A DNA stretch of 64,000 bases from Botryllus schlosseri. Taxonomy: Eukaryota. Of this stretch, positions 3,220 through 55,700 are shown in pieces. Positions within the stretch are counted from its first letter, which is position 1; each line of letters opens with the position of its first letter. The position numbers were made by a program, and so were the translations under genes. The notes beneath the pieces were generated by a model. The model did no database searches. It had not been told where the DNA came from and saw only the letters and a list, made by a program, of their open reading frames with translations. The stretch lies in contig CM119381.1 of the NCBI GenBank assembly GCA_051294905.1, positions 21,514,001 to 21,578,000 on the forward strand, read 5' to 3'.

Positions 3220-3406
3220 CTAAATAAGGAATCGTTTGATTCTCTGAATGTAAAATAGGCTGTATATTCCACCCCAGCATTAGCGTTGTATGACTTGGTA
3301 TGCTTCTACACTTCGTGCGGAACATATTTGGTGGTCGGTATAGCTTGAAGCAAAATCTTGAGTATTGTCAAAATGCGCAGCAGCAAGAGTTCTCTTCTCT
3401 CTAAAA

Positions 3407-8962: not shown

Positions 8963-9038
8963 ATGGCTGTAAACTATTATATTGCTTCACTCTTGTTTAT
9001 ATTCGGATTACTACCGAAAGCGGCCCCTCTTGAAAACC
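8963..9038 (+). CDS. Exon 1: signal peptide
   Basis: [25 protein letters not shown] followed by a strong donor C|gtaagt (phase 1), which matches the phase-1 acceptor at 9993. Confidence 0.8.
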
Positions 9039-12000
9039 GTAAGTGTTTGCTTTTGGTGTTAATTTTTCTTACGAAATTTTCTCTAAAAGTGGTAGTAGTA
9101 TCCACTACAGCAAATATTATTGATACAGCAATTTCAGGAATTGTCATGACGCGTTGAAAATGATTTTCCACAGTGTGGCGGTACTGCATGCTTCTAGTAC
9201 ATCCGTTTGTTCTGTTTCGGAAATATTTAGTTATTTTGTCTGCGGCAATGAATATTTAATTTTGAATTTATTTAAGTTTGGCGAATGATGCCTTGCAATC
9301 CTACATGGCGTGTAAGATTTCCAGGACATAATGCTATCCGTCAATTTGGGGAATATATAGTAGGCTTACCATATTTTGGAAATCTAAAAAGAGGACACTT
9401 TTTCAGAAATTTGAGACTTGCAAAACCGGAGAAGAATTCTCAAAATTCGGTGAACTTTTCCCACTTTGTGATCGGTTGACTAAAAAGAACCACATTGTCG
9501 GGTGGTTGACTAAAAAAAAAGGTCATCTTTTCGCTTAGAGCTCAAAATACCGTTTGAGCGTCACTGCTGTGCTAATTTACGGCATATCACTCGCATTTTG
9601 CTCTAAATATGACCTAAATTTTCAAAAAAGAGGACAAAAGGGCGTCCTCCGAGGACACTTCAAAAAAGTCAAAAAAGAGGACAAATCCTCTGAAAAGAGG
9701 ACGTATGGTAACCCCACGTATAGAGAATTACAGATACCCGTCGTTTCACATAATTTAGGAATAGAGAATGTAATCGGATGCACGGCGTGGAAAGAATGGA
9801 ATCACAAAATTCATAACATTCACGCCAAGAACGACACGAAGCCGTGGAAAAGCCGCGGTTGGGTCAGGCCTGTCGTGCCGCTTTCTAAAAAATCCCTCAC
9901 AATAGTCACGATAGATGGCACGACAGGCACATGTTTTGCTACATTCGATTTAGCAATAATTTAACAATGTATCGCATTATATGTCTCAACAGCTTGTAAT
10001 GGAACAGAAGTCGTCGTCAACGGAACAAGTGGATCGATTTCATCCCCAAATTACCCGGACGCCTACGGAAACAGCATGCTTTGCCGATGGAGAATAAGTA
10101 CTCCGAACAACACGGTGTGGATATACGATGTGCTTTAATATACAACACGTATATATAACATGAGATTGCCCACACGAAACTACCTTATACTATCAGGACC
10201 TTGCGATTACATGGCATCGCTTTATCGACTCGGGTTTCAGTACAAATCGTTCAAATTTCTGGAATGGATGATATATTCAGGATTCCGGACTAACGTTACA
10301 CTTGCAATGCTTCCAAGCAGCATACGTTCTTTCGTCCTAATTTATCCAACTCCATGTCACCGGCATTCTATTTTTAGAGGGTGGAGGTGAGGTTCGAATC
10401 CTTATTTGAAGTCGAACCAATCAGTCACACTGGCTGCTATGACTATATTGAGTTCGAGGACGTAAACAAGGTGCGGTATAAAGAGTGTATCCAAGTAACC
10501 AATTTTTATGCACCATATTATCGTTTGCCTGTACACTACAATAGGAACTTTGCGGACTAACGGCGCCACAGAGCTTCGTCACGCCAAGCAATGTGCTTTC
10601 GATATCTTTTTTTACTGACCAATATGTTACGATGCGAGGTTTTTCGTTCAATTGGACTGCGATAGGTGGGTATTTGCTCTATGTATGTACAGGTACAGTC
10701 GAGTTCGCTTAATTTCTATACACTTTGGTCTCGGCGAGCAAAAATCAGTTGTTCGTTTCGTTGTCATGCGTAGAAGCAGACAACACATTAAAGCTACTGT
10801 ACTGTAGCATAATAAATGAATTACAGTGGCGCTAGAATCTCGTACAGTATTTCGATATCAAGTGATTCAACAAACACCGTACAATATTGTGTGTAACACA
10901 CATATGCGAGGTTGAAACGAACGTTAATTCTTCAAATACAGTGCTAAGCCATACAGCAAGGGCTGAAACGGTATTAGCGCATTTGATATGTAACCACAAG
11001 GTAGGATTTAGAAGTCAAAAGCTGTGGGCCAGGCGGAAAATCTTCTCGAAAAGCTTACGACGCTTACTGAAGGCTAAATCCACGCAATCGTAATGAAGTA
11101 AAAGTAGGCTTACCATACGTCCTCTCTCAAGAGGATTTGTCCTCTTTTTTGACTTTTTTGAAAGTGTCCTCGGAGGACGCCCTCTTGTCCTCTTTTTTGA
11201 GACGTTGTCCTCTTTTTTGAAAATTTAGGTATAATTAGAGAAAAATGCGAGTGATATGCCGTAAATTAGCCGAGAAGTGACGCTCCGCCGGGTTTTTCGG
11301 AGTGAAAAACGGTGATTTGAGCTCTGAGCGAAAAGATGACCTTTTTTTTAGTCAACCGATCACAAAGTAGGAAAAATTCACCGATTTTGCAAGTCTCAAA
11401 TTTCTGAAAAAGTGTCCTCTTTTTAGATTTCCAAAATATGGTAAGCCTAAGTAAAAGCGACTATGAAGCCGGCATGGCTCTATATGAGTTGGGAATTGCG
11501 AACCTAGGTCCGAATTGAGCGGAGAATTGCCTGAATTAACTGGAGTTTTTTGCGTGTAATATTTACTTTTGTTTCGTCCCCGAGCCGAATAAAGCAGATG
11601 TCCAGCTTACGCGGTGTCCGACGGGTTCGACTCTATCTGAGTTACGTTACGAAAGACTTCGCAACATTCAATCGATATAGCGTGCCATAGACAAATACAG
11701 ACCGCCCACTACGATACCTGTGTGTTAAGGGGCAACGATCTGCAAGATCATCCGTTGGAAATGTGATATCGTCTCTCACGAACGAAATATTGAAGCAATT
11801 TTAATACGGTTTATGCCAGTGATGCTAAAAATCTCATTCCACCTTGCTATGTTTTGAATGGCTCCAAGGCAGGTGCCTTACGCGCACAAGGGCTCTGCCC
11901 TCAACAATAACAGTGTCATATACGATACCCAGCACCGTAACTGCCGCACCCCAAACCCCCCAATTAGGGGGGCCCAAGCTCGAAGGGGGCCCCAAATTAT

Positions 12001-15000
12001 TTCGTGAATTAGCATAAATTATAGAGTATTTTTGAAAATTTATGCAATATTTTCCAAAATTTTTCGCGCTAGCCGCGATTTAAAGTTGCCAAATATCTTG
12101 ATTATGTGGTACTCTTCCCCCAAGAAAAAACACGCAAGATTTATAGAAATGGACATATCGGCGTTGGCCATTAACACGCCACTACGCACCAAGATATATA
12201 ACGATTTAGGACTTATTCCATGCGACTCCAAGAGGTGTGCCAGAACGATCGGCAGCGCGAAAAGCTTGGCCGAAACGGACTGCCCTTAGGCAGACCGAAA
12301 ACTTCGTTATATATGCAAAATAATAGGTTTAATTGTCCATAGGCGCCTAAATGACTGGCGCCATATGTTCCTGCCTTGGCAATCTGAACCTCATAAGACA
12401 AATACCATCCAGCAGGAAAAATATATGCCAGTGAAGAAATACCAATTTGAAATCGTGTGCGTCTTTTAGTTTAGTACGTTTGAGCGATTTTATATTTTTG
12501 ATATAGCAGACAGGAGGTCACGAAATAAAATCATGTAACGAAGTCATACCAACGGGTCCGCCCGCCCGAAGATGTTTAATTATTATTTACGGGCCCTACA
12601 GTTTCCGGTAGATCTGATAACGTGAGCAGAGAGGACAAGATATTGATAGCAATATTTATGCAATTCCCGATCTTATTGACCGATTATATAATGAATTATC
12701 GAAAATTTTCGCGCTTCGAGCTGGCTCACTAAACAGTGCAGCTAATTTCGTGGCAAAAGCGAACACTGTGATGAGCGGGTCGGTTTATCACCCTATGAGA
12801 ACCCAAAACCAAATTACCCTATGGGGGGCCAAGGCCAACGTTTTGGGGGGGGGCTGACGAAGTGCTGTTACGGCCCTGACGATACCAACAATCACACAAC
12901 AGGTCAGGCTCTCAAATCCGGCGGCAGTACAATCACATTCATATAATTGATTCATCGTCATCCTCGGCCCTCCCTATGATTGGCCCACACACGACTCATG
13001 ATAAATCTGCATCAAAAATCTGCGTATGAAGTAGCACATGCCGCGTATGTTCTAACTTGGTTTAAAAGTTGTCGTATCCAGTCATATCTTTTGCTGTGAT
13101 TACTGAGTCCGATCTAACACATTACAAGCTCTTGTCTATAGCTTATTCAGATGATGCTTCATCCTCACTCAACGAGCTCGAAACGGACGCGAGATGGACG
13201 AATAGAATAAGTTACACGATTAGTAAAATGGTGTTTTAGATGCATCACTGATACCGGATCCAGTGACTACATATATCGACGGAGATTCCGGTCAAATTAC
13301 TTCTCCCGACTACCCCAACGAATACGGCGATTTTCTGGAATATACTTGGATCGTTAACGGGTCGTCTGGAAAGGTATATTTGTTCTATTACATTTGCAAT
13401 CAAAAGCTGGCTGAATGATGATATCCGGACTTACAAGAAATGCGAATTTCAGACCGACAATTATGACATACATATTTATTCCGTAATACAGAGTATGTTG
13501 GTGGAATTTGACCCCCTTATCGACATGCAAGAAAATGCGGGGTGTTCGAACGACTACCTCACTATCTCCGAAGGCTCGTTACCACCGAGCTCAACGGTAA
13601 TGCAGCATGCTTGATTGGCTGACTGTTGGCGAGTTGAATAGTTATTTCCTATTAGGATTATCAAGTCGTCATTTGCGCGTATACTGAACCAAAGATATTT
13701 TTCTCTGGCGTCATCTACATCGTATTTAAAACGGACTCGTCTATCGGTGGTGCTGGATTTTCTCTGAACTTCTCTGTGGTCGGTAAGACGAGTTTTTCAA
13801 TTTTGAGATTGATGCCCCTTTAAAACTCTTTCCAAAAGAGATGTCGCCCTGATATCCTGCAGCAAAGTGGATATCCCGCAGTGCCTACCTATAGTACCTA
13901 CTATGTAACCGGCGATATGTGCTCCATTTCCGTGATGCTGAACAACACAATCTGATATTATTATATAAACTACATGCTAGGCCAGAGGTGTAAAACACAA
14001 CTTGGGTCGCCGGCCAGATTCCAACCTTTTGAACACTCGCGGGCCGGACCAGTGAGATGATTCCATATCACCTCTTTTGCTTTACACTCCAACCTTTGTT
14101 TTACACTAAAATACTTTATCATCAAGCCTACATTCGTAATGGTGTATTGCATTATATTACGCAATATAGCCGTGGTCGGGAACCTTTTTCGTCCGAAGAG
14201 CCATATTGACCGTATATTTTCCCTTTTACCTCCCAAAGAGCCATACATGTCCAACAACTACTACGTCACAATTGAAAAATCGTGACGTCATGGTAGCGCA
14301 AAGTCGACATCAATAGATGGGATTCGCCGTTTACACCGTATTTTCTCAGTAAAACTCGTACTAACCATGCTGGCTTCCTTGTTTGAATAATGAGTATGCA
14401 AAACTTGAGCCACATAGATTTTTTACAAGAAATATATTTTGAATTGTATTGCACTCAGAGGCATATGATATTTTTCGGAGCTCAAGACGCATAACATTTA
14501 GATTTCCAACAGACGTAGACAACAATAAGTGTATCAATCTACTTTTAACATGCCTTTTACAGTTAATGCGTCTTTTGGTGTTGCATGGTATTCCTGACGA
14601 CTTTTCAGTATGGTTGATAAATCGTTAAGGCTAAGCCTCATACTAAATTTAATACATTCGTCAGCTATACGAGATCGCGAGAATGTCTTGTAAGTACCCA
14701 TGATGGCATGCGTATGTGGAGCCAAATATGATCACTATACATTAGTATACATACCGGCACCCATTTGTGATGTGTCAGTTACATGGGGTTAGGGGAGGCA
14801 AGTGGGGCAGTGCCTCACATGTCTACAAGATTTTGAACATTTTTACTACCAAAATCACGTAACTTGCATCCTATTTATTGTTAGAAAATAACGTTCGAAA
14901 CAGAGGCTAAGGCATTGTGATAGCGCAATTCATCGTAATAACTGATATTATTCGAATGTAATTGTCACACTGATTCCGATTCGGCTTCTCAATTCTCAAA

Positions 15001-45000: not shown

Positions 45001-48000
45001 GTAGACAAGCGAGTCACTGCCTCACTTGTCACCCCTGACCTCACGTCACTGACGCATCACAAATGTGTACTTGCACTAATGTTTAGTGACCAAGTTTGGT
45101 TCCACATACGTATGCCATCATGGGTCCTCGCATTTAAGAATAGCATCAGGACGAACTTACGATCTCGTAAAACTGAAGAAAATCTCAAATTTTGTATGAA
45201 GCTTAACCTTAACAATTATCAACCATACTAAAAAGCCACCAGGAATACCATGCGACACCAAACGACGCATTAACTGTAAAACACGCGTTGAAAGTAGATC
45301 AATACTTTTATTGTTGTCTATGGTTCTGTTGTAAATCTAAATGTTATTCGTCTTAAGCTTCGGAAAATACCATATGCCTCACAGTGCAATAAAATTAAAA
45401 TATATTACTTGCAAAATAATTATGCAGCTCAAGTTTGGCATATTCATTATTCAAATGAGGCAACCAGCATCATTATTACGAGTTTTTACGGAGAAAATAC
45501 GGTGCAAACGACGAATCCCATGTAGTGATGTCGAATTTGCGCTACCATGACGTCACGATTTTTTAATTCTGGCGTAGTAGATGATTGACATGTATGGCTC
45601 TTTCGGAGGTAAAACGATAAATATACGGTCATTATGGCTCTTCGGACGGAAAAGGTTCCCAACCACTGTTATTCACCTAGTCTCTACACTACAAGCTATT
45701 GTCTGAGTAGTAGTGATTATTCTTACGCTTGGTGTCGTTCTAAATGCCACTCATGAGGATGTGAATGGAGCAGCTAATGTTCTATCATGATATTATTTCA
45801 ATTTATGTTGGTAAAGTTTTATCAGAATCAGAGGTTCGTATAAGATGCACTGCACAATTGCCACTAATTCGTGCCCAATACTGCTGCCCAGAGGATCTTC
45901 GGAACACAGGAAACAATTTGCACCACGTGGTCCAAATACAGTTTGAGTTTGCATCTCATATGGCTCATAGAACCTTTAAACGTTTTGCCAATGCGGGCCT
46001 CTGAATTATAACGTTACGAATACCGAACACAAAGGTGAACCGAGCGTCAGTCAGTCAGTCAGTCAGTATGCTTTTATTCATCTCACCAACAAACACATGT
46101 AAATTGGTATAGATTGGGAGACGACGGGGGACCGGTAGGTCTTAGAATCAGTCGCCACCCAGCGGAGTTATATATGAGTAAATATGGCAAGATCAATACT
46201 AACGAACTTATGACAGTTAACCAATGGACATAAAAATAAACAACAGATAAAAGTCATGGAAGCGTTATAGTCTATACTGCATGCAGTCGGTTCATATAAC
46301 CGTATCCACATCATATTGGTAGAGTGTTTATGGCGTCAAAATAACATGAACGCTGCGTGTCGAACAGCTACCACTCAACAGGCCATTCTCTCGGTAAATG
46401 GCGGATCGACCCTAAATATTATTTGGTTTACTTTTGACACCAAGATACAGCATACACGCTCACGTATGGTGCCAAATTTTCCACTCCCATTCCATGTATG
46501 TATAGTTTTATATTTTTATTGTTATATTTATGAAATGTTGCGTGCTCAGCATTGAGAGGCATAGATGCTGACCACATGTGTTAAAATAGTACGCGCAGCA
46601 GCAGTGTCTGAGCCTATGATATGCGCCTATATATTAATATAATATTCTGATTATTTATTATATCTACAGTGATCAATGACGTCCAAAGTGAGTATGCTGC
46701 GATATACCTCTCAGATCCTTTTTACAGTAACGCTGGTTCTCTTCTAATTGTCTTTATTTCATGAAATGAAGTATGTTCTGAGCTCGATATAATCGAAGAC
46801 ACAGAAGAAGGTGTGATTGTGCCGCCAATATTCGCTGGACGATATTTAGACTCGACTCAATGCAGTTGGCTCATACGCGGAAAACCGAACACAGTAAGTG
46901 TAGACCATATTAGGTGGTCAAAATTTTGTCGTGGTGCGGATGAACATCCATTACAAATAATTGTGCTGTAATCGAAAGAGAGTCCAATATCATTGAAATG
47001 CAATTAATTGCAACCATCCTAACCCATGAGTACACCCGTGGCCTTCGATAAGTTTCCGTAGGCCCCGTGCACCTTTGCGGCTGGGCAATCTGTAACTCAT
47101 TTTAAATCGCAGCAAACAATACATTCATATTGCCCAAATTTATTCCACTCGAAGCGTTTCGACTGACTCTGATCAGGGGCGAACGTCAGTAATCAGTATA
47201 CGGTTAATCAAATTCGAAATATAAAAAAGAATTTTGTTGTTGTGACGTAATAATGACAATTACACAGAGTCGCGACGACAAAATTATTTCTATATTTCGA
47301 ATTTGATTAACCGCATTTACACTACTGACGTTCGCCCCTGATGAGAGTAAGTTGGAAAACTTCGAGTGGAATAAATGTGGCAATATCAACGTATTGGTTG
47401 CTGCAATATTGAAGTTCTACTTCTCAAATCCTATTCATTTTATATCCCACACCGACTGCGTTTGCTGTGTAAGCGGTTATTGACAGCTGCGATATCGCAA
47501 TCGATTTTATTCAAGATCGTATGCAGTGGTATGTTGTAAAATTCTATCGCGGACTTACAGGTGATTGAAATACGATTCGAGTTCTTTGACTTGAAAGATT
47601 GTAATTACGATGTGGACGATTTTGTGAGCATTTACGATGGCAACTCGACATCAGCAAGACAGGTACAAATTATGATGTTCCAGTAGGCCTATATATAGAC
47701 CATAGTTCTGCATTCTCTGTGCACAGGCAGTGGGCCTACATGCTTGATAATTTGGCATCGAATATTTGCCTCAGCTATAAACAACTAGACTATGACCTGG
47801 GCCTAGGACGAAACTATTGGTTCCGCTTTGGTAATCCAAATTGTTGACTTTTGAATTTTCCTTTTATTTACGGGGTTTGCACCCCTGAATGGTTTTGGGT
47901 CGCGTGAACGCGAACTTTTTAAAAGGTTCTATGTGAATGCGGACGTAAACACGAACTTCTTGTGACGTCATATTGCTCATTTCAACACTACTTTTCCGTA

Positions 48001-51000
48001 AAGTAATATATTAATGTACGCGATACCTAGTGACGACTAGGGCCATATTATGCCACTATGCTGAAGTACACGCCGACTTATTAAGCATCGTCAATTATAT
48101 CAATTTGAACAGTCAGATGTTATATTAATTCCTTGAAATCAATATCTCCCCTGGCTTTGTCAACAATTTTTCAACAAGGACTTGCAAGGGAATATACGCA
48201 TACGCCTCAACGGTCTAGGCTAGAATGGACAATGAATTCGTTAGGCGTCATATTGTTGCTATACAAAACCGTGGCCTCCTTGATAGGACGGATTTGGTTT
48301 ACGATACAATAACGATCATAATAAGGCATGATAGAGCCCGGACATCTGCTAGATATGTTACATTAGAAAACGATGCATTCTTTATACCAATGTCCTTGAT
48401 GTAAAAAATGATTCATTGAATAAGCCCAATGTCTTTTCGTTTTTGAAGTTGTGTGATTGCGGGTCAGGTTCACAGCAGAGAGTCACTAATTATTTACAAA
48501 CGCAAAGCTGAATATTTTGGGAATATTTTTTTAACAAACCAATTAAGTTTTATAAAATTGGCAATGCCCATTCTCGTTTAGTGCAACGTTTCTTTTTGTT
48601 TGCTGTCAGCGCCATGCATTTCAACTAAACATGTTAAAATAACGTGACTAATTGAAATGGACATTTATGAAAAAGATTCACCGTGTAGAGCAAAAGCAAA
48701 CCTTTACATATCTGAGGCTCACACACCGAGAGAGAACATGCAGCTCACATTCGCAGCTTACCTCTAGTTCGAAGGATAGCATGCAGCGTAGAATTAGAGT
48801 TTTTTTTCAAGCTTACACAAGGGAATTAGGACCTGAAAATCACCTCAAGATTGATTTCCATTTAAACTTAATAAAGGTTTACGACACGTTACTGTGTGGG
48901 AGCGAGGAGAGCATCAGAGGGTTTGAGTCCAGCTCAAATGAAGCTCTAATCACGTTTCACTCGGGCGGCTCTCCGGGTGGTCAGGGGTTCAAAATCAACT
49001 GGAATATTGTAGGTGAGTTCGTGACTCTCACTTATAAGTAGATGCAAGAGGGTCAGCTTTGGATTGTAGGCAGCCTATTTATACAAAGCTAGGGTTGTAT
49101 ATAAAACAAAAATCAGTATGAAACAGACATGTTTAAAACATGGCCCTTGTTTGAAACATGTTTATATTGTTGTTTTTTGAGCCTTTTTAGCCATGACGTC
49201 ACGAATCTTTAATTGTGACGCCGCCGCGGATTGATATTGAGAATTGAAAATATAGGGTAACTAACTATAGTGCTCCTTGATGAAAAAGGCCTCCGACCCC
49301 CATCTCAAACGGACCAAAAATATATTGGACCAGGACTAGATCGTTATGCAGTATTTTTACGGATGACGGTCATCATCATCAGAACATCCCTTCCGTACAA
49401 ATGACATTGCTTTCCGTGGTATAACTGTCGAGCGGTTGCAAACATTCCCTATCGTATACGTTTACCATATCGGGTGCAAGTCGTCCGTAGGCTCGTACTA
49501 CGTGTTTTATCGAAAGTAATTACACATTGATCGCAAAGTTACACGACTCTATAAAAGATAGTTAAATTATACATACCATCGGTAATAGAATACCATTCAA
49601 TACTACATATTACAATTTTGATTGTTCTGATCAGTGATAGTATGATGACGTGTACCTCCTCGTTTCTACCTACTCCTTGACACCATTTCCTTGAGTAATT
49701 AAAATCTTTTTCCTCTACTCCCAATCCATACTTCAAGTAGTTTTGATAATTTTGAAAGTCCATACTTCTACATGTAATTAAGTACAGATTTTTGCAATTA
49801 CATCGACTTGTGTATCGTCACTGACTGCTCCAGCCACCTCACGAAAACCATACTAGTATAAAAATCTACCATTAAACTAATTCATTCGCAAATAAGCTGG
49901 AGAGCGCCTAATGTAAGTAATCTGACTTATACTCAGATGTGGTCAAAGTATTAATCATTGGTACTCAAGCAAAGGTAGTAGAAACGTGTTAAATATCTAT
50001 TCTAGTACAAGTAGAAAGCAGGGATGTTCAAGTTAGAAAAAAAGTAAATATTATAGGACTGGGTTTGGTTAATAAACTGGAATCTGATAAGTAGTAGACG
50101 TATAATTTAAAATCATAACCACTTGACTAAGAAGTGCTATGAAGCAAAAACCTACTTTAGTACGTCGCGATGTAGAGGTATTTCGTCACTGACCCCTCGG
50201 CTTGTAATACCACTAATGTTGAATTGTGTGGTCTACAAAATCATCAGAGTTTACCCATCTCAAATAGACGCAGACTGATCCATTTCTTTAAACTGTGTTT
50301 CTGTAAATTTCGTTGTGCGATTTTACTGCGAGAACACACTGATTCCGCCCGATTTCAGAGGACTGCTCGCCTGATCAATTCCGCTGCTGGAGCGGTGAAT
50401 CTTGCCTCGACGGCTCCCTACAATGCGACGGAAAGTCAGACTGCGCCGATGGGAGCGACGAAAAAGAATGCAGTGGGTAGCCCGCACTCATGCTACCGTA
50501 ACATGCTCACACCTTATTCATTGCACATTTCAGCGACCGACGACGGAGAGTGCGGAAAACAAGACATCGCTCCTGAATTTTTGTGGGTACGTTTTCGATC
50601 GAATCGACTCGTGAATTTGGCTTCATTCAGTCTCGAATTTATAGCACGCCAGAATCGTCGGCGGACACTTGGCGAAAAACGGCTCGTGGCCGTTCGTTGC
50701 GCAAATAGAAACTACTGCTCTTGGAGACTTCTTGTGCGCCGGTACCATCGTCAACGACCGATGGGTTCTCACGAGCGCCACTTGCGTGGATTCACAATTT
50801 GCGTAAGTATGTGTATGTGTGTGTAAATAGAAGAAGTCGACACCAAGTCAAAGCCAAAGACAAAGTATTCAGCATTGATACTCAATTCGAAGTAGTAGCC
50901 ATTTCTAAGGTATGTCAAAAGTACTTCAAGCGGAAGTAGAAATTGAAAGGTATGTTGCAAGTGGGGCCTATACATGAGTAAGTACTTTCTAAAACTATTG

Positions 51001-54000
51001 ATCTGTATTTTGTAAAATCAATCATAAAAGTGATGATACAACTACTTTATGATATAACTACCCAACGAAGATCACGCCCTTGAAATTCAATAAACAAATA
51101 ATAAGGGAAGCGATTCGGGCATTTGGATATCGTATTACGAATCGGTACCAATATCGACTATTTTCAGGGAAGATCTTCTCGTCACAGTCGGCACCGTGTC
51201 TTTTCTTCCGCCGAACGGCACGAAATATAAAGTCGAGTTTATCAGTCGACCTCCAGAGTAAGTGACAATATTTATAAGCATCTCGCCTATTGACGTCAGC
51301 TTATAATGCAATCGTTTCAGTTCAATAATAATGCATCCGGAAGGAGCCGGTCTTCTAAAACTCTCAGCTAACATGGCGTTTTCTTCTTTCGTGCAACCGG
51401 CCTGCGTTGCCATCCCTGGCTTGACGAGTGAACCCGAACCTGGTGAATTTTGCGTCGCACTTGGATGGGGCTCCAGACGTAAGTTGTCATTGATTTGCGA
51501 ATGGGAATTGTTCGCTATAACTGTTGACCGGTCAACGAGAATTTCGTGCGTGGTTATACACATTGAAATGTCGACAATCGTTATTATTCTCTTGCGCATG
51601 TTGGTAGGCCCTACGACATCCATCTCACAATAATTAGAGGAAATGCGGTCTTTGAATCTTGCTGTAAATGAGCCTTTTACTGCGTACGTGACGGCCCAGC
51701 CAAGAATGAGGTTCTTTGGTAGGGTATGTGCGGTACGAAATGGTGCATGTATGCAGGTCGTCGTCTCATTGAAGATTTCGATTTGATGTACATTATCAAT
51801 TTTACATTTGACATGAGTACATTACTAATGCATAGGGATGTGTAAGAGTTAGGCTTCTAGATTAGATTCGGACATATATCCAACTTTATGCGCAAGAGCT
51901 TCGGGATAACAGAATTCGGACCATTGGTATTTCGACAGCCTACCCATGACTTGGGTGAATTCGAATTGCTGACTATTATTGCTGCCGAGGAGTCTAGCCC
52001 AGATACAGTACGATGTCGGGATTTGGCATATGACATTCTGTTACTTCAATTGGCAGCTCAAAATTTATAGATTTCACCTGGGATTAGGGTGTTTGGTTTC
52101 ATAGTCACGCGCCAAATTGCAACGAACGCAATCAATACAAATCATATCATATCACTGCCTTACCTGCGGGCCAACAACTACTTTTATACCCTTTTTTAAT
52201 GATAACTTCATCATACAAACCGTTTATGATATAATCAGTAGTTTTCCACATGATTCGCGTGCGGACGTCGATGCACAAATGAAAATTGTAATTTCAGTTT
52301 CTGAGTTCGTGGAATCTGGATCTTTGAGACAAGCTCAAGTTCCCATACAGCATGAGGATGTTTGCACTGCTACGCGTCCGTTTGGAGACGCCAATACAAC
52401 CTTCTGCAGCGGAGACAGCGTAAACGGCGGTGTCGGCTCCTGCACGGTAACTTCAAACTCATGCAGTCACCTAGCAGTTGAATATATTGTATAAATTCTC
52501 TCTCTCTCTCTCTCTGTCGAACAGTCTGATCGTGGCGGGCCAGTCATGTGCTTTCGTGACAACGTCTGGATACAATTCGGAATTATCGTCCGTCCATCGT
52601 GCGGGGAATTCGGTGTTTTCGATTTTTACACAAGAGTTTCGTATTATACCGAATGGATAGAAGAAAGTGAGTATATAGCGTTACACTCGTCCACAAATAT
52701 CCAGATTTTTGGCGGCACGCCGTGAATGAAAATAGTGTATTTCATCGATTTCTCCCACAGTGTATAGAAGTGCTCTTCAACCTTTTTCGTCGTGGTAAAC
52801 CCTTTTAACTTTTATCCGAAAATCGTACACCCTGACCACCACGTTGATTCCGTAGTAAGCCTATATATCCCAGGGGTGTTCAACCGTTTTGCTATTCACG
52901 GCTTTTTTCGATTAGATATATAGCATCCAACCGCCATAACATCTCGACGTCATATACTCACGATGAATTAGCTACTGGAAACTTGGCATCGCGGATAGCC
53001 CTTGCGTATAAAAGTTTTTAACTGTGCCGTAGGTTTTATCTATGCACCAAAATTGGGAGTTTGAATGCTGGGGAATGTTATCTGGATTCCTTTTCTACCG
53101 GGAAAAATAATTTTGTCGATACTAGTGTTTTTTTTCTTCATATTATACTGTCAAATATTTATCCATTCTTTTCCCACGTGATCAGACTAACTAATAGAGC
53201 TGATGTATACACCTATAGGGGGTGTCTTCAAAAATATTGGGCACAGAATTAATGATGATGCCTCGTCCGGTTTTTATTAATGACTTTGTTGCATGTTGCT
53301 ATTTTTGACGTCCCATCGGGATTGTAGGCATAGTCGAAATATATATTGGAATCGCCCCAACGTAGCAGAAAAATCTTCATTCGTGAAACGCACACGATTC
53401 TGACTTGGTATTTCTTTATGGGGTGCATCATTTTCCTCTGCGGTAAGATTTTCAAGTTTAATTATACTCTCTCAAAGATTTAGGAACCAATTCGTTAATT
53501 CAAATGGCATTCTGACGACCGTCAACACACGACCATTTAATTATGTTTAGAGGGCCGCCTAATTTTTGTTTAACGGCTGCATGCGACCGCACCCCTGCGG
53601 GTTTCGACCTCTGACGAGTTGAAATTTGGATGAACAAGGCTGCAACGTATGGACAGTGCTAAATACTATAATCAGGGCTCTGGGTTACCGTACCACCACG
53701 ACCACCTAACACAGTGTTTCCCAAACTCGTCCCATTACCGATGAATGATGAACCAATGGTGAGGATAAACATTCGCTCATGACATCACAAAAGGAATGTA
53801 ATTTACAAGCTGCGTACAGCTGATATGAACATTGTGTTATATTGCACAACCGGTCAACGTGCTCTGAGGCATAAACTTGCCTATTTATTGTGATAATCAG
53901 TAATTGGTCCATTTCAATGCGGGTCTGGTACACCCCAGTACACCCATCTGAGTGGTACACCCTTTTATAATTTTGGTACACCCCAGGGTGTACGAAAGAG

Positions 54001-55700
54001 CCTGACGTATAGGATACAAATCGGGTAAACGGCACTTCTGCATTTCCTGATATAAAATACTGCTTTCACGCCCATCCCAATGGGCAGATACGAGTAAGAC
54101 CCACAAATTCTTGTTGGGATATGTATGCACCAGGGTATAGTGACTTCTGTTCTCGCGTACCACCCAAAGAAATGGCAAGAATGCGATGAACATAAACTTA
54201 ATCCACTGCACACCTATATGATATATATACATGATGATTGAGCCGTAGGTTCAGTTCACCCAATGGGATGAGTATCAAAGTAAATTCTATAACTAGAAGG
54301 GGCCGAAGGCCTGATTTGGACCACGCTACTGCGGAGATCAGGTGGGATACACCTCTATACCGCCCATGTATACTTACAGAGCCCGAGCTTATTCGGTGCT
54401 ATCGATTATTATTATTTTTGCCGTGCGTACAGGCACAGAGAATACTTTCAGGGGGTTTAGCTGTAGTATTCCCGGATTCGTTGACCGGTTAAGAATCTTC
54501 CATAACGTTTAGTATTTTCAACCAATACAAACAACGTCGGCATATGTGGGAGTGTAGTGGATATCACACTGTGCTGCTAGTGGCAAAGAATTGTCAAAAG
54601 TCAAAAGACACTGGATTGCAAAGCTATATAATAATTCAACTTTGGTTGTGGAAAGATTCTCCTAAAAAGCTTCTCCTTCTGATCTTCAATTTATTTAGCT
54701 ATGAACATGACGCTGCCAAAGCACACTGTGAGCGATTCTACCGCCACGAATTCGACTACGCATTCCGCTACCAATATGTTGTCAACAACCTCGGTCTCTA
54801 CGGCGACTGCAACGTTACGTCCCGGTGAGATGTCATTAGCTATATATAAATTCAAGTTTGTACTGGGGGAAAAATTAGCAATATACATTGAACTAAGAAT
54901 GAGAACAGTAGCCTATGCCATATTAGAGATATGAGGAGACTTCAGTTAGTGATGGGAATATGCGTTATATTTATAATATCATGAGGTAACATAGTCTTAT
55001 TTTGACACGGGCTCATTTCATCGACGCGATTATAACAAAATGTGACGGGACGCACCGCTTCTTCGATGAGAAAACACTCTTCTCATGAAATACATTATTG
55101 CTTTGGGATATAAAATGATGTATTTTGCATGGTATGGATATGATGTAGAAATTTTTTGATAGGTTTGTTCAGATTTCAAGGATTTCTCGGAATATATGTT
55201 ATCACTGAGTATCATGAATACACGATGTTAGTTGTTTTATAAACAAAGATGGCTAATTTATTATTGTCTGGATTACAGCAGTAACCGTTACTGATGAAAG
55301 TATGACATCACCTGCCGGTGAAGTACCCCAATCGACAAATAACAATACCGGTAAGCCTTTTTTACAACCTGAGGCATGTTAATTGTAGTCCTTACTTATA
55401 GGCCCAAAAATATTGAAACCACGATCTGTAAACATATGCAGACGTATTGTATAGCGTCTATATTCAGTATATAGAAAATCAGTAATCGTGTGATATTGTA
55501 TGGACTTGTCCCCAGAACAATAACAGCGAAGAATATCCAGTGTCATGGCCGCAATCAGCGCAATTACATCGTAGTGTATATAATCGAAATTAATGAATTT
55601 TATTTTCACATTTTTAGTGGCAGCAACCACCTCAGCAGCTACCACGATATTTCCACAGCACGTTATACTGCTGACTGTTATACTGGCGATGATTCAGTGA
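8963..55700 (+). CDS. 42-exon gene for a ~1610-aa polyprotease: SP-CUB-CUB-[CUB-LDLa-S1 protease]x3-Ser/Thr stalk-GPI-like tail (ovochymase/polyserase-like mosaic)
   Basis: Hand-spliced model. All 41 introns are GT-AG, every junction is in frame, and the exon lengths sum to 4833 nt (1611 codons including TGA). Domain motifs are listed in the sub-features. Extra small exons in the long introns cannot be excluded. Confidence 0.9.
9361..9716. mobile_element. hAT MITE, TAGGCTTACCATA-end family (inverted relative to 11105-11449)
   Basis: Ends taggcttaccata / tatggtaacccca. The body is the reverse complement of 11105-11449. TSD is degenerate. Confidence 0.8.
9993..10665 (+). CDS. Exons 2-4: CUB domain 1
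   Basis: 9993-10114 [40 protein letters not shown]; 10378-10470 [31 protein letters not shown]; 10545-10665 [40 protein letters not shown]. Confidence 0.9.
11105..11449. mobile_element. hAT MITE, TAGGCTTACCATA-end family
   Basis: TIRs taggcttaccata / tatggtaagccta. Perfect TSD agtaaaag. Confidence 0.9.
11930..12878. mobile_element. Non-autonomous hAT element, CAGGGCCGTAAC-end family
   Basis: Ends cagcaccgtaac / gttacggccctg. Perfect TSD acgatacc. Related pieces lie at ~22560, ~25080-25500, 31520-31915 and 36463-36654. Confidence 0.85.
13240..13782 (+). CDS. Exons 5-7: CUB domain 2
   Basis: 13240-13373 ...[31 protein letters not shown]; 13492-13596 [28 protein letters not shown]...; 13656-13782 ...[38 protein letters not shown]. 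Confidence 0.9.
14170..15542. mobile_element. 1.37-kb non-autonomous hAT Buster-like element
   Basis: Ends ccgtggtcgggaacc / ggttcccgaccactg. Perfect TSD caatatag. A full-length inverted copy lies at 44270-45668. Confidence 0.9.
16110..16833. mobile_element. hAT MITE, TAGGGATGGTGTGAAC-end family with GTGAAC subterminal arrays
   Basis: Ends taggcatggtg / catcatcccta. Perfect TSD atgtggcc. Confidence 0.85.
17009..17176. repeat. Small fold-back element with a TTAGGG-like core
   Basis: Inverted arms tgtcgtaatagcgaaggatttaaa / tttaaatacttcgctattaagaca enclose ggttag/tttgggtt/cttagggg-type units. Confidence 0.55.
17995..18846. mobile_element. hAT MITE, TAGGGATGGTGTGAAC-end family (inverted relative to 16110-16833)
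   Basis: TIRs tagggatggtgtgaac / gttcacaccatcccta. Perfect TSD ctttcaac. Confidence 0.9.
18935..20156 (+). CDS. Exons 8-10: CUB domain 3
   Basis: 18935-19062 APTCDG...[28 protein letters not shown]; 19157-19258 [34 protein letters not shown]; 20024-20156 [44 protein letters not shown]. Confidence 0.9.
20216..21873 (+). CDS. Exons 11-12: LDLa repeat 1 and activation linker 1
   Basis: 20216-20326 [36 protein letters not shown](C); 21815-21873 [19 protein letters not shown]. Confidence 0.9.
20639..20988. mobile_element. hAT MITE, TAGGGTTAC-end family
   Basis: Ends tagggttacatt / atatggcatcccta. TSD tataaaac/tgtaaaac. Confidence 0.8.
22802..23322. mobile_element. hAT MITE, TAGGGTTGC-end family with TTAAAC arrays
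   Basis: Ends tagggttgcattt / aaatgcaactcta. TSD ttggtaac/gtggtaac. Partial inverted copies lie at 39839-40118 and 49090-49530. Confidence 0.8.
23730..30430 (+). CDS. Exons 13-17: serine protease domain 1 (complete triad, chymotrypsin-like pocket)
   Basis: 23730-23887 HSR|IVGG...VLTAAHC; 25942-26049; 26176-26333 YDIAVL...PICLP...TGWG; 29850-29998 ...GGASTCQ; 30286-30430 GDSGGP...TSFG...PGSY. By manual alignment the pocket is Ser189/Gly216/Gly226. Confidence 0.92.
24153..24465. mobile_element. Fused MITE fragments: Buster-like left end plus an inverted end of the 30556 family
   Basis: cagtggtgggaaaac...gcggcccgcg at the left. At the right, gcgcacgtgcgcagcttagagagaacattg is the reverse complement of the start of 30556. 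Confidence 0.55.
27390..28600 (-). mobile_element. 5'-truncated, decayed Penelope-like retroelement (RT thumb, GIY-YIG endonuclease, 3' pseudo-LTR)
   Basis: - strand peptides [12 protein letters not shown]...[36 protein letters not shown] and [13 protein letters not shown]...[31 protein letters not shown] match the conserved Penelope RT C-terminus and GIY-YIG domain. Frameshifted. The right boundary is uncertain. Confidence 0.85.
27451..27496 (-). ncRNA. Degenerate minimal hammerhead ribozyme (Penelope family 1)
   Basis: Same 46-nt motif as 63597-63642, but with core changes CUGACGA>CUAACGA and GAAA>GAAG. Confidence 0.6.
30556..31999. mobile_element. Composite hAT element (CAATGTTCCCTC ends) carrying ~1.2 kb of cargo
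   Basis: Left end caatgttccctc at 30556. Right ends gagggaacattg end at both 30736 and 31999. The perfect TSD atcatatg flanks only the outer pair (30548-30555, 32000-32007). Confidence 0.8.
32997..33758. mobile_element. Old Buster-like MITE split by the 33085-33649 insertion
   Basis: Ends tggtggtttccaa / ttgagaaccacca. No clear TSD. Confidence 0.5.
33085..33649. mobile_element. hAT MITE, CAGGGTTGTAA-end family with GACTCGAGTC arrays
   Basis: TIRs cagggttgtaa / ttacaaccctg. Perfect TSD ggtcagca. Confidence 0.9.
34131..35978 (+). CDS. Exons 18-21: short linker and CUB domain 4
   Basis: 34131-34163 [10 protein letters not shown]; 34227-34342 ...[31 protein letters not shown]; 35655-35768 [14 protein letters not shown]...[12 protein letters not shown]; 35846-35978 ...ICGYRPP...[21 protein letters not shown]. 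Confidence 0.9.
34356..34890. mobile_element. hAT MITE, CAGGGTTGTAA-end family (second copy, same orientation)
   Basis: TIRs as above. Perfect TSD tgttgtaa. Begins 13 nt after the exon-19 donor. Confidence 0.9.
36047..36282 (+). CDS. Exons 22-23: LDLa repeat 2 and activation linker 2
   Basis: 36047-36157 [36 protein letters not shown]; 36221-36282 [20 protein letters not shown]. Confidence 0.9.
36463..36654. mobile_element. Internally deleted copy of the 11930-12878 family
   Basis: Ends cagggccgtaac / gtttcggccctg. TSD gctgcagc/gctgtagc. Confidence 0.8.
37070..44013 (+). CDS. Exons 24-28: serine protease domain 2 (complete triad, non-tryptic activation site and pocket)
   Basis: 37070-37224 TPL|IIGG...VLTAAHC; 39180-39290; 40925-41073 RNDIAFL...PVCLP...TGWG; 43653-43810 ILQQVQV...DLGACF; 43875-44013 GDSGGP...ASFITG...RSFY. 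By manual alignment the pocket is Gly189/Ile216/Ser226. Confidence 0.92.
37298..38175. mobile_element. hAT MITE, CAGTGTT-end family with AGTCA/GACTCGA arrays
   Basis: Ends cagtgttgcgat / atcgtaatactg. Flanks gtatcttt(ata)/gtatctta resemble a disturbed TSD. Confidence 0.7.
38212..38700. mobile_element. Right-truncated tandem copy of the 37298 family
   Basis: cagtgttgggatcaagtcaatacc... is colinear with 37298-~37720. Confidence 0.65.
39839..40118. mobile_element. Partial copy of the 22802-23322 family, interrupted by a Penelope fragment
   Basis: Matches the reverse complement of the right half of 22802-23322 (gtgacgtcacgaatc..., catcgtatacgtcgactacattgggtgcaaatcgt). Confidence 0.65.
40119..40428 (-). 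mobile_element. Penelope-like 3' fragment (end of GIY-YIG ORF plus pseudo-LTR), family 1
   Basis: The - strand reads [36 protein letters not shown] (stop 40317-40319), followed by the same 3' region as 27390-27590 and 63556-63704. Confidence 0.88.
40180..40225 (-). ncRNA. Intact minimal type I hammerhead ribozyme (Penelope family 1)
   Basis: GCUGAC-gauu-ACCC-CUGACGA-G-uGUCAGC-C-GAAA-AUAU-UC-GGGU-uc. The core is complete. Confidence 0.8.
41410..41570. repeat. CTACTT/AGTAG motif array (related arrays at ~43395-43560 and ~49720-50100)
   Basis: Repeated ctacttctactt...gagtag units. Probably subterminal arrays of a decayed MITE family. Termini not resolved. Confidence 0.45.
41698..42584. mobile_element. 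hAT Buster-like MITE
   Basis: TIRs cagaggtctcaaac / gtttgagacctctg. Perfect TSD ttatggag. Confidence 0.9.
44270..45668. mobile_element. Full-length inverted copy of the 14170-15542 element
   Basis: Ends tagtggtcgggaacc / ggttcccaaccactg. TSD gtatacac/ttattcac (6 of 8). The body is colinear with the reverse complement of 14170-15542. Confidence 0.88.
46027..46160 (-). mobile_element. Probable 3' tail of an L2/CR1-type LINE or derived SINE
   Basis: The - strand ends ...gaataaaagcata(ctga)5. An AATAAA plus short tandem-repeat tail is typical of these clades. No clear ORF remains. Confidence 0.4.
46670..49012 (+). CDS. Exons 29-32: 18-nt micro-exon and CUB domain 5
   Basis: 46670-46687 INDVQ; 46772-46893 [18 protein letters not shown]...[14 protein letters not shown]; 47561-47662 [27 protein letters not shown]...; 48877-49012 ...LCGS...[22 protein letters not shown]. 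Confidence 0.88.
47144..47190 (-). ncRNA. Degenerate minimal hammerhead ribozyme (family 2, left arm)
   Basis: ACUGAC-guucgccc-CUGAUCA-G-aGUCAGU-C-GAAA-CGCU-UC-GAGUGG. One core change (G8>C). Confidence 0.55.
47324..47370 (+). ncRNA. Degenerate minimal hammerhead ribozyme (family 2, right arm)
   Basis: ACUGAC-guucgccc-CUGAUGA-G-aguaagu-u-ggaaaacu-UC-GAGUGG. CUGAUGA is intact, while the helix II/GAAA region is mutated. Confidence 0.5.
47890..48630. mobile_element. Terminus-less copy of the 17995-18846 family
   Basis: Colinear with ~18020-18660 (gtgaacgcgaac..., gtgacgtcatattgct..., tgccactatgctgaagt..., ttcaacaagga.ttgcaaggg). Confidence 0.65.
49090..49530. mobile_element. Partial copy of the 22802-23322 family
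   Basis: Starts tagggttgtat. Shares ttaaaacatggccc..., gacgtcacgaatc and gggtgcaagtcgtccgtaggct blocks. Confidence 0.6.
50359..50586 (+). CDS. Exons 33-34: LDLa repeat 3 and activation linker 3
   Basis: 50359-50472 [37 protein letters not shown]; 50534-50586 [17 protein letters not shown]. Confidence 0.9.
50645..52666 (+). CDS. Exons 35-39: catalytically dead serine protease homologue (domain 3)
   Basis: 50645-50802 HAR|IVGG...VLTSATC (His>Thr); 51168-51257; 51321-51478 EGAGLLKL (Asp lost)...PACVA...LGWG; 52298-52446; 52525-52666 SDRGGP (Ser>Arg)...[12 protein letters not shown]. Confidence 0.9.
54699..55700 (+). CDS. Exons 40-42: Ser/Thr-rich stalk and C-terminal hydrophobic GPI-signal-like tail
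   Basis: 54699-54824 [41 protein letters not shown]; 55279-55350 [23 protein letters not shown]; 55618-55700 [26 protein letters not shown]. Confidence 0.82.

What the first reader, a model, noticed from the sequence alone, without database searches (positions are those of the whole stretch)
8963..55700. Surface-tethered triple-protease polyprotein with an unusual (CUB-LDLa-protease)x3 + GPI architecture
Seen: signal peptide, 5 CUB, 3 LDLa, 3 S1 protease domains, a mucin-like stalk and a hydrophobic C-terminus. Known: ovochymases combine several protease and CUB domains but are secreted and lack LDLa. Polyserase-1/TMPRSS9 is type II membrane-anchored. Matriptase and enteropeptidase put CUB/LDLa before a single protease. 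I do not recognise this combination. Each linker has the CG..I(A/P)PE Cys that pairs with Cys122 (PICLP/PVCLP/PACVA), so all chains should remain disulfide-tethered to the anchor after activation. Inference: a cell-surface proteolytic platform, for example in fertilisation, hatching or immunity.
Basis: partly seen in the sequence, partly recalled or inferred. Interest (0 to 1): 0.8.

Follow-up and report, generated by a model that had tools for sequence, protein, structure and literature searches.

The report
Sea-squirt surface triple-protease mosaic gene
A 40-exon sea-squirt gene encodes one large secreted-pathway protein with five CUB, three LDLa and three trypsin-like domains (two intact, one catalytically dead) and a GPI-anchor-like tail. 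The gene is real and conserved among sea squirts, but it is unstudied and I found no RNA evidence for it.

Summary
On the + strand, 8963-55700, I built a 40-exon model with every intron GT-AG and no stop or frameshift. It gives 1591 aa: signal peptide, CUBx3-LDLa-S1, CUB-LDLa-S1, CUB-LDLa-S1, a Ser/Thr stalk and a short hydrophobic C-terminus.

It aligns end to end (45.8% identity) with a Styela clava RefSeq model of the same architecture. "I do not recognise this combination" therefore means unstudied, not unique. Ascidian databases hold such proteins under the misleading name "TMPRSS9-like".

A domain tree separates them from vertebrate TMPRSS9 and ovochymase.

"Triple protease" overstates it. 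Domain 3 has lost His57, Asp102 and Ser195 (now T/G/R). The loss is shared with two Styela homologues and all sampled tandem paralogues, and the domain is under purifying selection (dN/dS 0.19-0.28).

Domain 2 has Leu, not Arg, at its activation site. Domain 1 has a chymotrypsin-type pocket, which suggests a built-in cascade (inference).

The GPI tail rests on rules of thumb and on similar tails in homologues.

Four RNA runs gave no exonic reads, so splicing and expression remain untested.

The gene lies in a tandem array with about 12 domain-3-type final exons. This scan already reported the same kind of gene on the adjacent paralogue (s1-231977).

The parts
8963..9038 (+). Exon 1: start codon and signal-peptide-like N-terminus (6 residues, then an 11-residue hydrophobic core)
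   Evidence: Model. GTAAGT donor, phase 1. The exon is 72% conserved in paralogue dn2. No signal-peptide predictor was available.
9993..10665 (+). CUB1 (exons 2-4: 9993-10114, 10378-10470, 10545-10665)
   Evidence: Pfam CUB on exon 2, 31.8 bits. Colinear tblastn hits to P0151. Model.
13240..13782 (+). CUB2 (exons 5-7: 13240-13373, 13492-13596, 13656-13782)
   Evidence: tblastn to P0151 residues 147-278. Domain HMM.
18935..20156 (+). CUB3 (exons 8-10: 18935-19062, 19157-19258, 20024-20156)
   Evidence: Pfam CUB on exon 10, 22.2 bits. tblastn to P0022 and P0151.
20216..20326 (+). LDLa1 (exon 11)
   Evidence: Pfam Ldl_recept_a, 37.7 bits.
21815..21873 (+). Linker 1 (exon 12) with the spare Cys ([13 protein letters not shown]) placed before activation site R|IVGG
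   Evidence: The ECGK..I.PEF.W motif is conserved across the ascidian homologues.
23730..30430 (+). S1 domain 1 (exons 13-17: 23730-23887, 25942-26049, 26176-26333, 29850-29998, 30286-30430). Triad H/D/S intact; Ser189, Gly216, Gly226.
   Evidence: Pfam Trypsin on exons 13 and 17. Triad and pocket residues. Groups with Styela T1 domains at 99/97 support.
34227..35978 (+). CUB4 (exons 18-20: 34227-34342, 35655-35768, 35846-35978). Joined to domain 1 in phase 1 with no spacer.
   Evidence: tblastn to P0022 residues 459-579.
36047..36282 (+). LDLa2 (exon 21, 36047-36157) and linker 2 (exon 22, 36227-36282; [13 protein letters not shown]). The 69-nt intron between them is in frame.
   Evidence: Pfam Ldl_recept_a, 34.6 bits. 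Splice sites. The boundary has the same phase as in units 1 and 3.
37070..44013 (+). S1 domain 2 (exons 23-27: 37070-37224, 39180-39290, 40925-41073, 43653-43810, 43875-44013). Triad intact; activation site TPL|IIGG; Gly189.
   Evidence: Pfam Trypsin, 57.4 bits on exon 23.. Groups with Styela T2 domains at 100/99 support.
46772..49012 (+). CUB5 (exons 28-30: 46772-46893, 47561-47662, 48877-49012)
   Evidence: tblastn to P0022 residues 882-1004 and to P0151. Model.
50359..50586 (+). LDLa3 (exon 31, 50359-50472) and linker 3 (exon 32, 50534-50586; [13 protein letters not shown])
   Evidence: Pfam Ldl_recept_a, 45.4 bits..
50645..52666 (+). S1-fold pseudoprotease, domain 3 (exons 33-37: 50645-50802, 51168-51257, 51321-51478, 52298-52446, 52525-52666). 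His57 to Thr (LTSATC), Asp102 to Gly (EGAGLL), Ser195 to Arg (SDRGGP). The activation site R|IVGG, Asp194 and all the disulfide cysteines are kept.
   Evidence: Also dead in all paralogues sampled. dN/dS 0.19-0.28.
54699..55350 (+). Ser/Thr-rich stalk (exons 38-39: 54699-54824, 55279-55350); both exons are phase 1-1
   Evidence: Splice sites. 37% Ser+Thr and 3 N-x-S/T sites across the 93-aa tail (exons 38-40). Part of exon 38 (23 residues) is 83% conserved in dn2. Stalks of similar composition in Styela P0151, P0153 and P0022.
55618..55700 (+). Exon 40: GPI-signal-like C-terminus. Small residues S-A-A, a 7-residue spacer, then an 11-12 residue hydrophobic run and the stop codon.
   Evidence: The exon is conserved in dn2. 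The S-A-A motif and hydrophobic end are also in Styela P0151. No GPI predictor was available.

Best explanation
The locus is a single 40-exon ascidian gene. Its 1591-aa product enters the secretory pathway. It is most likely held on the outer face of the cell by a C-terminal GPI anchor on a glycosylated Ser/Thr stalk.

The product carries three CUB-LDLa-S1 units; the first has three CUB domains. Units 1 and 2 are intact serine-protease zymogens. Unit 3 is an S1-fold pseudoprotease next to the membrane.

Each S1 domain is preceded by a linker Cys that should pair with Cys122. Activation cleavages would then nick the chain without releasing any piece.

Inferred mechanism:
- An outside Arg-specific protease cleaves R|IVGG of domain 1.
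- Domain 1 has a chymotrypsin-type pocket (Ser189, Gly216, Gly226). It then cleaves the Leu|Ile activation bond of domain 2.
- Domain 3 still has R|IVGG and Asp194. It acts as a non-catalytic binding or regulatory module that may also switch shape on cleavage.
- The CUB and LDLa modules choose partners or substrates.

The gene belongs to an ascidian-specific, tandemly expanded family that databases mislabel "TMPRSS9-like".

What is shown: the gene structure, the domain content, the catalytic-residue status, the conservation and the selection. What is inferred: the GPI anchoring, the disulfide tethering, the cascade order and the biological role.
For: Gene model:
- 40 exons, all GT-AG, no stop codons.
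- Pfam domains found on the window's own exons.
- 45.8% identity over 1565 aligned residues to Styela clava P0151, with only two small gaps.
- Identical architecture CCCLT-CLT-CLT in P0151 and P0153.

One polypeptide:
- A JGI contig of 4565 bp carries one unbroken ORF for CLTx3.
- In an upstream paralogue, one 444-nt open tblastn match spans the end of T1 and the start of CUB4. That leaves no room for a gene boundary.

The gene is functional:
- dN/dS is 0.24-0.27 against two tandem paralogues. For the dead domain alone it is 0.19-0.28.

Domain features:
- Catalytic triads read HDS, HDS and TGR. Activation residues (P1) are R, L and R. Residue 189 is S, G and G.
- The same pattern occurs in P0151. 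T2 has Leu or Val at P1 in P0151, P0153 and P0022. TPL is conserved in all five paralogues where T2 was sampled.
- Among solved structures, the T1 domain of P0151 is closest to enteropeptidase, elastase and chymotrypsin C.

Orthology:
- T1, T2 and T3 each group with their Styela counterparts. They sit apart from the TMPRSS9 and ovochymase domains.

Tail:
- A Ser/Thr stalk followed by a hydrophobic end, with no charged residues after it, is found in the Styela and Clavelina homologues and in paralogue dn2.
Against: No transcript evidence:
- Four bulk RNA-seq runs of the same species label were sampled at 6-13%. They gave no read on exons 26-30.
- No indexed RNA run holds the exons.
- Every splice junction, including the two between units and the three tail exons, is therefore predicted only.

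Weak points in the predictions:
- The GPI and signal-peptide calls are rules of thumb. No predictor was run.
- The -3/-1 positions after the N-terminal hydrophobic core are not textbook.
- The hydrophobic tail is short.
- The pocket assignments for residues 216 and 226 rest on motif counting from remembered chymotrypsin numbering.
- Nothing shows that domain 1 cleaves domain 2.
Confidence: 0.72

Rival explanations
1. The locus is two or three separate genes, or is mainly used through internal promoters or polyadenylation sites. In that case the products would be single-unit CUB-LDLa-protease proteins, and only the last unit would be tethered.
For: No RNA read supports any junction between units. 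Introns 17 and 27 are long (3796 and 2758 nt) and full of repeats. If intron 17 or 27 were retained, a stop codon would follow within a few codons.
Against: No Met-plus-signal exon that fits the reading frame lies in front of exon 18. The candidate at 34058-34207 ends in phase 0, whereas exon 18 needs phase 1, and joining them would create a stop codon. The donor and acceptor phases at both unit boundaries match. All homologous models in Styela, Clavelina and Phallusia, and the unbroken JGI ORF, are multi-unit. In paralogues the same unit boundaries are only about 100-900 nt apart.
Confidence: 0.08
2. The gene is a single gene, but the product is not GPI-anchored. The hydrophobic end could be a weak transmembrane or tail segment, or it could simply be removed. 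The protein would then be secreted, as ovochymase is.
For: No GPI predictor was run. The hydrophobic run is only 11-12 residues. The related polyprotease HrOvochymase is described as a signal-peptide polyprotease with no membrane anchor (PMC9265791). The JGI homologue P0017 ends in a charged tail, not a hydrophobic one.
Against: Eleven to twelve residues is too short for a membrane-spanning helix, and no residues follow it. A small S-A-A triplet sits about 10 residues upstream, which matches the usual omega-site layout. The same layout is conserved in paralogue dn2, in Styela P0151, P0153 and P0022, and in Clavelina P0157.
Confidence: 0.15
3. The gene is a silent or dying member of a large tandem array and does not make protein today.
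For: There were no exonic reads in four RNA runs. About a dozen paralogues lie nearby, so redundancy is plausible.
Against: All 40 exons are intact with consensus splice sites. dN/dS against the paralogues is 0.24-0.27. The runs were sampled at only 6-13%, and the tissues they came from are unknown.
Confidence: 0.05

Closest known systems
Styela clava predicted proteins P0151 and P0153 (RefSeq 'transmembrane protease serine 9-like' isoforms) and P0022 (uncharacterized LOC120348165)
   Same: P0151 and P0153 have the identical order CUBx3-LDLa-S1 / CUB-LDLa-S1 / CUB-LDLa-S1 plus a Ser/Thr stalk and a hydrophobic end. Identity to P0151 is 45.8% over the full length. The protease domains are orthologous one to one. 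Domain 3 is dead in P0151 and P0022. Domain 2 has Leu or Val at its activation site.
   Different: They come from another species. Domain 3 of P0153 is still catalytically intact. As listed here, P0022 lacks the signal peptide and the first CUB domain (its N-terminus starts within CUB2). None has been studied experimentally, and I found no paper on them.
TMPRSS9 / polyserase-1 (vertebrates)
   Same: Both are one polypeptide with three S1 domains, contain LDLa, and are membrane-bound. From my own knowledge (not tested here), the third TMPRSS9 domain is also inactive.
   Different: TMPRSS9 is a type II protein with an N-terminal anchor. It has SEA plus one LDLa and then three S1 domains back to back, with no CUB (Pfam lists). 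In the tree its three domains form their own clade, so the two triplications are independent.
Ovochymase (Xenopus; HrOvochymase of Halocynthia roretzi)
   Same: It is a polyprotease with a signal peptide, three S1 domains and five CUB domains, and its last S1 domain lacks a typical triad (PMC9265791).
   Different: The domain order is S1-CUB2-S1-CUB3-S1, so the proteases come first. It has no LDLa and no membrane anchor is described. Its domains fall outside the ascidian CLT groups in the tree.
Matriptase and enteropeptidase (type II transmembrane serine proteases)
   Same: CUB and LDLa modules sit directly before the protease. A linker Cys to Cys122 disulfide keeps the activated protease on its stem. 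Enteropeptidase is the best solved-structure match to the Styela T1 domain.
   Different: They have a single protease domain and an N-terminal signal anchor, and they are not repeated as units.
Prostasin and testisin (GPI-anchored S1 proteases)
   Same: An S1 protease held at the surface by a C-terminal GPI signal (my own knowledge of these proteins; not tested here).
   Different: They have a single S1 domain and no CUB or LDLa modules.

Membership tests
Peptidase S1 (chymotrypsin fold) | Match to the trypsin-domain profile | tested here: met
   PF00089 on the first exon of each domain (48.1, 57.4 and 39.0 bits) and on the last exon of T1 (29 bits). The last exon of T3 scores 17.2 bits, below the cut-off.
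Peptidase S1 (chymotrypsin fold) | Catalytic triad His57, Asp102, Ser195 | tested here: met
   Met for domains 1 and 2 (TAAHC, DIA, GDSGGP). Not met for domain 3 (SATC, GAGLL, SDRGGP), which is a pseudoprotease.
Peptidase S1 (chymotrypsin fold) | Zymogen activation motif and the Cys122 to propeptide-Cys pair | tested here: met
   Activation sites R|IVGG, L|IIGG and R|IVGG. Each domain has an unpaired Cys122 and one spare Cys in its linker. Formation of the disulfide itself cannot be tested here.
TMPRSS9 / polyserase-1 | Type II topology: a cytoplasmic N-terminus followed by a signal anchor | tested here: not met
   Only 6 residues precede an 11-residue hydrophobic core at the N-terminus. The hydrophobic anchor-like segment is at the C-terminus.
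TMPRSS9 / polyserase-1 | SEA plus one LDLa, followed by three adjacent S1 domains and no CUB | tested here: not met
   The window protein is CCCLT-CLT-CLT. TMPRSS9 entries carry PF01390, PF00057 and PF00089 only.
TMPRSS9 / polyserase-1 | Orthology of the protease domains | tested here: not met
   TMPRSS9 T1-T3 form a separate clade at 100/99 support. The window domains group with Styela T1, T2 and T3.
Ovochymase | Order S1-CUB-CUB-S1-CUB-CUB-CUB-S1, no LDLa, secreted | tested here: not met
   In the window protein CUB and LDLa precede each S1 domain, three LDLa are present, and there is a C-terminal hydrophobic tail. The ovochymase architecture is taken from PMC9265791.
GPI-anchored proteins | C-terminal signal: a small omega triplet, a 5-10 residue spacer, and a hydrophobic end with nothing after it | tested here: inconclusive
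   S-A-A, then a 7-residue spacer, then an 11-12 residue hydrophobic run to the stop codon. This is conserved in dn2 and in Styela. It is a rule of thumb only; no predictor and no biochemistry.
Ascidian CCCLT-CLT-CLT family (unnamed) | Same domain order, full-length colinearity and domain-wise orthology | tested here: met
Ascidian CCCLT-CLT-CLT family (unnamed) | Linker motif ECGK..I.PEF.W..R|I(V/I)GG, Leu or Val at the domain 2 activation site, and a dead domain 3 | tested here: met
   A dead domain 3 is shared with P0151 and P0022 but not with P0153.
Expressed gene | Spliced transcripts | tested here: inconclusive
   No read on exons 26-30 in runs X5, X7, X8 and X9, which were sampled at 6-13%. 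No indexed RNA run holds the exons.

The most novel reading that the evidence does not exclude
The protein could be a self-contained two-step protease cascade anchored at the cell surface.
- An external Arg-specific trigger activates domain 1.
- Domain 1 is specific for Leu, like chymotrypsin C. It then activates domain 2 at its conserved Leu|Ile bond, on the same chain or on a neighbouring one.
- The dead domain 3, next to the membrane, keeps its own Arg|Ile switch and Asp194. It would work as a cleavage-gated docking module.

The tandem array, with about 12 domain-3-type final exons, would vary the CUB recognition heads. Such a system could serve self/non-self or gamete recognition, or gut zymogen activation, in sea squirts.
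Probability: 0.2. Interest if true: 0.7.

Novelty: new variant of a known kind. Interest (0 to 1): 0.42.

Why it matters
Proteins with several serine-protease domains on one chain are rare, and their logic is poorly understood. This ascidian family combines four features:
- recognition modules before every protease domain;
- a C-terminal lipid-anchor-type tail instead of the usual N-terminal anchor;
- activation sites of mixed specificity (Arg, Leu, Arg);
- a conserved dead domain.

Together these make a testable model of a cascade built into one tethered molecule.

The result also shows that the database name "TMPRSS9-like" is misleading, because the triplication is independent of the vertebrate one.

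The local expansion into a tandem array, in the closest invertebrate relatives of vertebrates, hints at a fast-evolving surface function. What that function is remains open.

Tried and rejected
RNA evidence:
- Two run searches found no run recorded as RNA that holds the exons.
It gave no exonic reads and no joints. The only reads fell on a short repeat at 44271-44313. This neither supports nor refutes the splicing.

Searching for a close orthologue:
- I searched 1.84 billion representative proteins with the first exon of domain 3. Nothing exceeded 51% identity. The ranking was dominated by proteins with many protease domains, and useful homologues emerged only after local tblastn.

An alternative first exon for unit 2:
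- The piece at 34058-34207 has a Met and a hydrophobic stretch. I rejected it because the frames do not fit: it ends in phase 0, exon 18 needs phase 1, and the join makes a stop codon. The implied intron would also be only 37 nt.

Other negative results:
- By eye, the Cys-rich tail of the Clavelina homologue looked like a Ly6/uPAR module. Pfam found nothing, so I make no claim.
- Rfam at gathering score found no RNA family in the whole window.
I counted domain-3-type exons with a genome search instead.
- I did not fold a structure.

Full report
WHAT IS THERE

The window has about 40% G+C and contains no N. It is eukaryotic DNA. On the + strand, short open-frame pieces carry CUB, LDLa and trypsin-family motifs in a repeating order.

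For each pair of neighbouring pieces I listed every frame-compatible GT/GC donor and AG acceptor. I scored each pair by splice consensus and by alignment of the joined peptide to homologues. I then read the DNA at the ambiguous junctions by eye.

The result is a 40-exon model from 8963 to 55700. It has 4776 coding bases (1591 aa plus the stop codon). All 39 introns are GT-AG, 58 to 5152 nt long, and there is no internal stop.

DOMAIN CONTENT

Pfam run directly on the window's exons gives:
- Ldl_recept_a for exons 11, 21 and 31 (37.7, 34.6 and 45.4 bits; cut-off 24.1);
- Trypsin for the first exon of each protease domain (48.1, 57.4 and 39.0 bits; cut-off 20.6);
- CUB for exons 2 and 10, both above cut-off.

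HMMs built from the model's own domains give the order CCCLT-CLT-CLT (C = CUB, L = LDLa, T = trypsin-like). That is five CUB, three LDLa and three S1 domains.

The N-terminus has 6 residues and then an 11-residue hydrophobic core. The last 93 residues are 37% Ser+Thr with three N-x-S/T sites. They end in a small S-A-A triplet, a 7-residue spacer and an 11-12 residue hydrophobic run that stops at the stop codon.

THE THIRD DOMAIN IS DEAD

Domains 1 and 2 have TAAHC, DIA and GDSGGP. Domain 3 reads LTSATC, EGAGLL and SDRGGP, so His57, Asp102 and Ser195 are all replaced. It keeps the R|IVGG activation site, Asp194 and every canonical disulfide cysteine.

The loss is old and is being maintained:
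- Styela clava homologues P0151 and P0022 also have dead third domains, with triads E/D/V and E/D/T.
- Every tandem paralogue I sampled in this genome has His57 replaced by Thr, Ala or Arg. The two close paralogues also share SDRGGP.
- dN/dS for domain 3 against those two close paralogues is 0.19-0.28. That is as low as for the active domains.

"Triple protease" is therefore wrong. The protein has two proteases and one pseudoprotease.

ONE GENE OR SEVERAL

I could not get transcript evidence. Two run searches found no holder recorded as RNA. It used four bulk RNA runs sampled at 6-13% and gave no read on exons 26-30. That result is uninformative, not negative.

The comparative evidence favours one gene:
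- The model aligns from end to end with Styela clava P0151 (1633 aa). Identity is 45.8% over 1565 positions, and the model has only two gaps of 8 or more residues (9 and 11).
- P0151 and P0153 have exactly the same architecture. P0022, Clavelina P0157 and P0152, and Phallusia P0170 are also multi-unit.
- A 4565-bp JGI contig carries one unbroken ORF (25-4335) for CLTx3. This looks like an mRNA-derived contig, although it has no poly(A) end.
- Exons 17 and 27 end in phase 1, and exons 18 and 28 start in phase 1. No spacer residues separate the units.
- In an upstream paralogue, one open 444-nt match spans the end of domain 1 and the start of CUB4. In the two close paralogues that intron is about 900 nt.
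- The one Met-plus-hydrophobic piece in front of exon 18 does not fit the reading frame.

IS THE GENE ALIVE

All 40 exons are intact. The gene has two downstream tandem paralogues with the same architecture and 82-83% protein identity. Overall dN/dS against them is 0.24-0.27. This argues against a decaying copy.

TETHERING

Each S1 domain has the canonical cysteine pairs plus Cys122 (PICLP, PVCLP, PACVA). Each linker has one spare Cys, 15 residues before the cleavage site, in a motif conserved across the ascidian homologues (ECGK..I.PEF.W). By established knowledge of the chymotrypsin family, that pair is the Cys1-Cys122 bridge.

The GPI reading rests on three points:
- the layout of the last 21 residues;
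- the hydrophobic run being too short for a membrane helix;
- the same kind of end in paralogue dn2, in Styela P0151, P0153 and P0022, and in Clavelina P0157.

No predictor and no biochemistry were available, so this stays an inference.

A POSSIBLE BUILT-IN CASCADE (INFERENCE)

The activation residues are Arg, Leu and Arg for domains 1, 2 and 3. Leu or Val at the domain 2 site is conserved in three Styela proteins. TPL is conserved in all five paralogues where T2 was sampled.

No domain of the window protein has Asp189. The residues there are Ser, Gly and Gly.

Domain 1 has Ser189, and by motif counting it has Gly216 and Gly226, as chymotrypsin does. The solved structures nearest to the Styela domain 1 include enteropeptidase, elastase and chymotrypsin C.

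A simple reading follows. An outside Arg-specific enzyme starts domain 1, and domain 1 then activates domain 2 at Leu|Ile. Nothing here tests it.

RELATION TO KNOWN FAMILIES

NCBI names the Styela models "transmembrane protease serine 9-like". The name misleads for three reasons:
- TMPRSS9 is a type II protein.
- TMPRSS9 has SEA, one LDLa and three adjacent S1 domains, with no CUB.
- In a maximum-likelihood tree its three domains form their own clade (100/99). The window's domains 1, 2 and 3 instead group with Styela domains 1, 2 and 3 (99/97, 100/99, 94/94).

The ascidian triplication is therefore independent of the vertebrate one, and it predates the split between this species and Styela.

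Ovochymase shares the counts: three S1 domains and five CUB domains, with the last S1 lacking a typical triad in Halocynthia (PMC9265791). It differs in having the opposite order, no LDLa and no anchor, and its domains lie elsewhere in the tree.

Matriptase and enteropeptidase share the CUB/LDLa-before-protease stem and the disulfide tether. They have one protease domain and an N-terminal anchor.

Five literature searches found no paper on this architecture.

GENOMIC SETTING

The window is contig 11, 21,514,001-21,578,000, of a 496-Mb assembly. I did not establish the species. The closest homologues are all ascidian.

The gene sits in a same-strand tandem array. Twelve domain-3-type final exons lie between 21.19 and 21.66 Mb. 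Seven paralogous genes or gene parts lie within the 264 kb I could read.

A follow-up agent of this scan already examined the next paralogue downstream (s1-231977). It reached the same reading: two working domains and one dead one, with unstudied homologues in other sea squirts. I reached my reading before seeing that note, and I checked the paralogue's architecture myself.

VERDICT

The gene is real and intact, and it belongs to a conserved but unstudied ascidian family of surface-type mosaic polyproteases. The claim that the combination is unrecognised holds only for the literature, not for sequence databases. The "triple protease" label needs correcting. GPI anchoring, tethering, the cascade and any biological role remain inferences, and expression is unconfirmed. 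I rate it a new variant of a known kind, of moderate interest.

Noticed in passing
G000 contig 11, about 21.19-21.67 Mb (the window is 21,514,001-21,578,000): There is a same-strand tandem array of paralogous CUB-LDLa-S1 polyprotease genes. Twelve domain-3-type final exons were found. The two downstream copies (about 21,582,372-21,615,864 and 21,625,199-21,665,800) share the full architecture at 82-83% protein identity.
   Followed up: partly
G000 contig 11, 21,498,232-21,498,643 (upstream of the window): The last exon of a domain-3-type unit is followed only about 190 nt later by a CUB4-like exon. Some array members may therefore have more than three units, as Clavelina P0152 does with five or six.
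   Followed up: no
window 44271-44313: This short hairpin-like repeat is the only place in 43600-49100 hit by RNA reads, and it was hit in all four runs. The reads run on into unrelated sequence on both sides, and nearly all (39 of 40) show G instead of A at 44295. It looks like a dispersed element transcribed from elsewhere. Similar pieces occur at about 15,490-15,560 and 56,360-56,420 of the window.
   Followed up: partly
window 60672-61319, minus strand: An intronless 215-aa ORF matches the CaMKII association domain over residues 96-206 (PF08332, 24.5 bits, cut-off 22.1). It has no kinase part.
   Followed up: partly
whole window, including 47109-47434 and 63430-63717: Rfam found no RNA family at gathering score anywhere in the window. 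That includes the places where first-stage notes report hammerhead ribozymes. I did not try a more permissive search.
   Followed up: partly
window 33040-33630 and 34315-34900 (intron 17); also 37270-37480 and 38140-38470 (intron 23): The same Ser/His-rich translated pattern recurs in these places in different frames. This suggests copies of one interspersed element inside the introns.
   Followed up: no
P0157 and P0039 (Clavelina lepadiformis), last ~150 residues: In these homologues the stalk is followed by a 10-Cys module that ends in CNGS, and then by the hydrophobic end. By eye it resembles a Ly6/uPAR module, but Pfam finds nothing.
   Followed up: partly
L001 (JGI contig, 4565 bp), ORF 25-4335: This marine CLTx3 homologue has its first S1 domain dead (R/D/A) rather than its third. 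It ends in a long Ser/Thr repeat and a charged tail instead of a hydrophobic one.
   Followed up: partly
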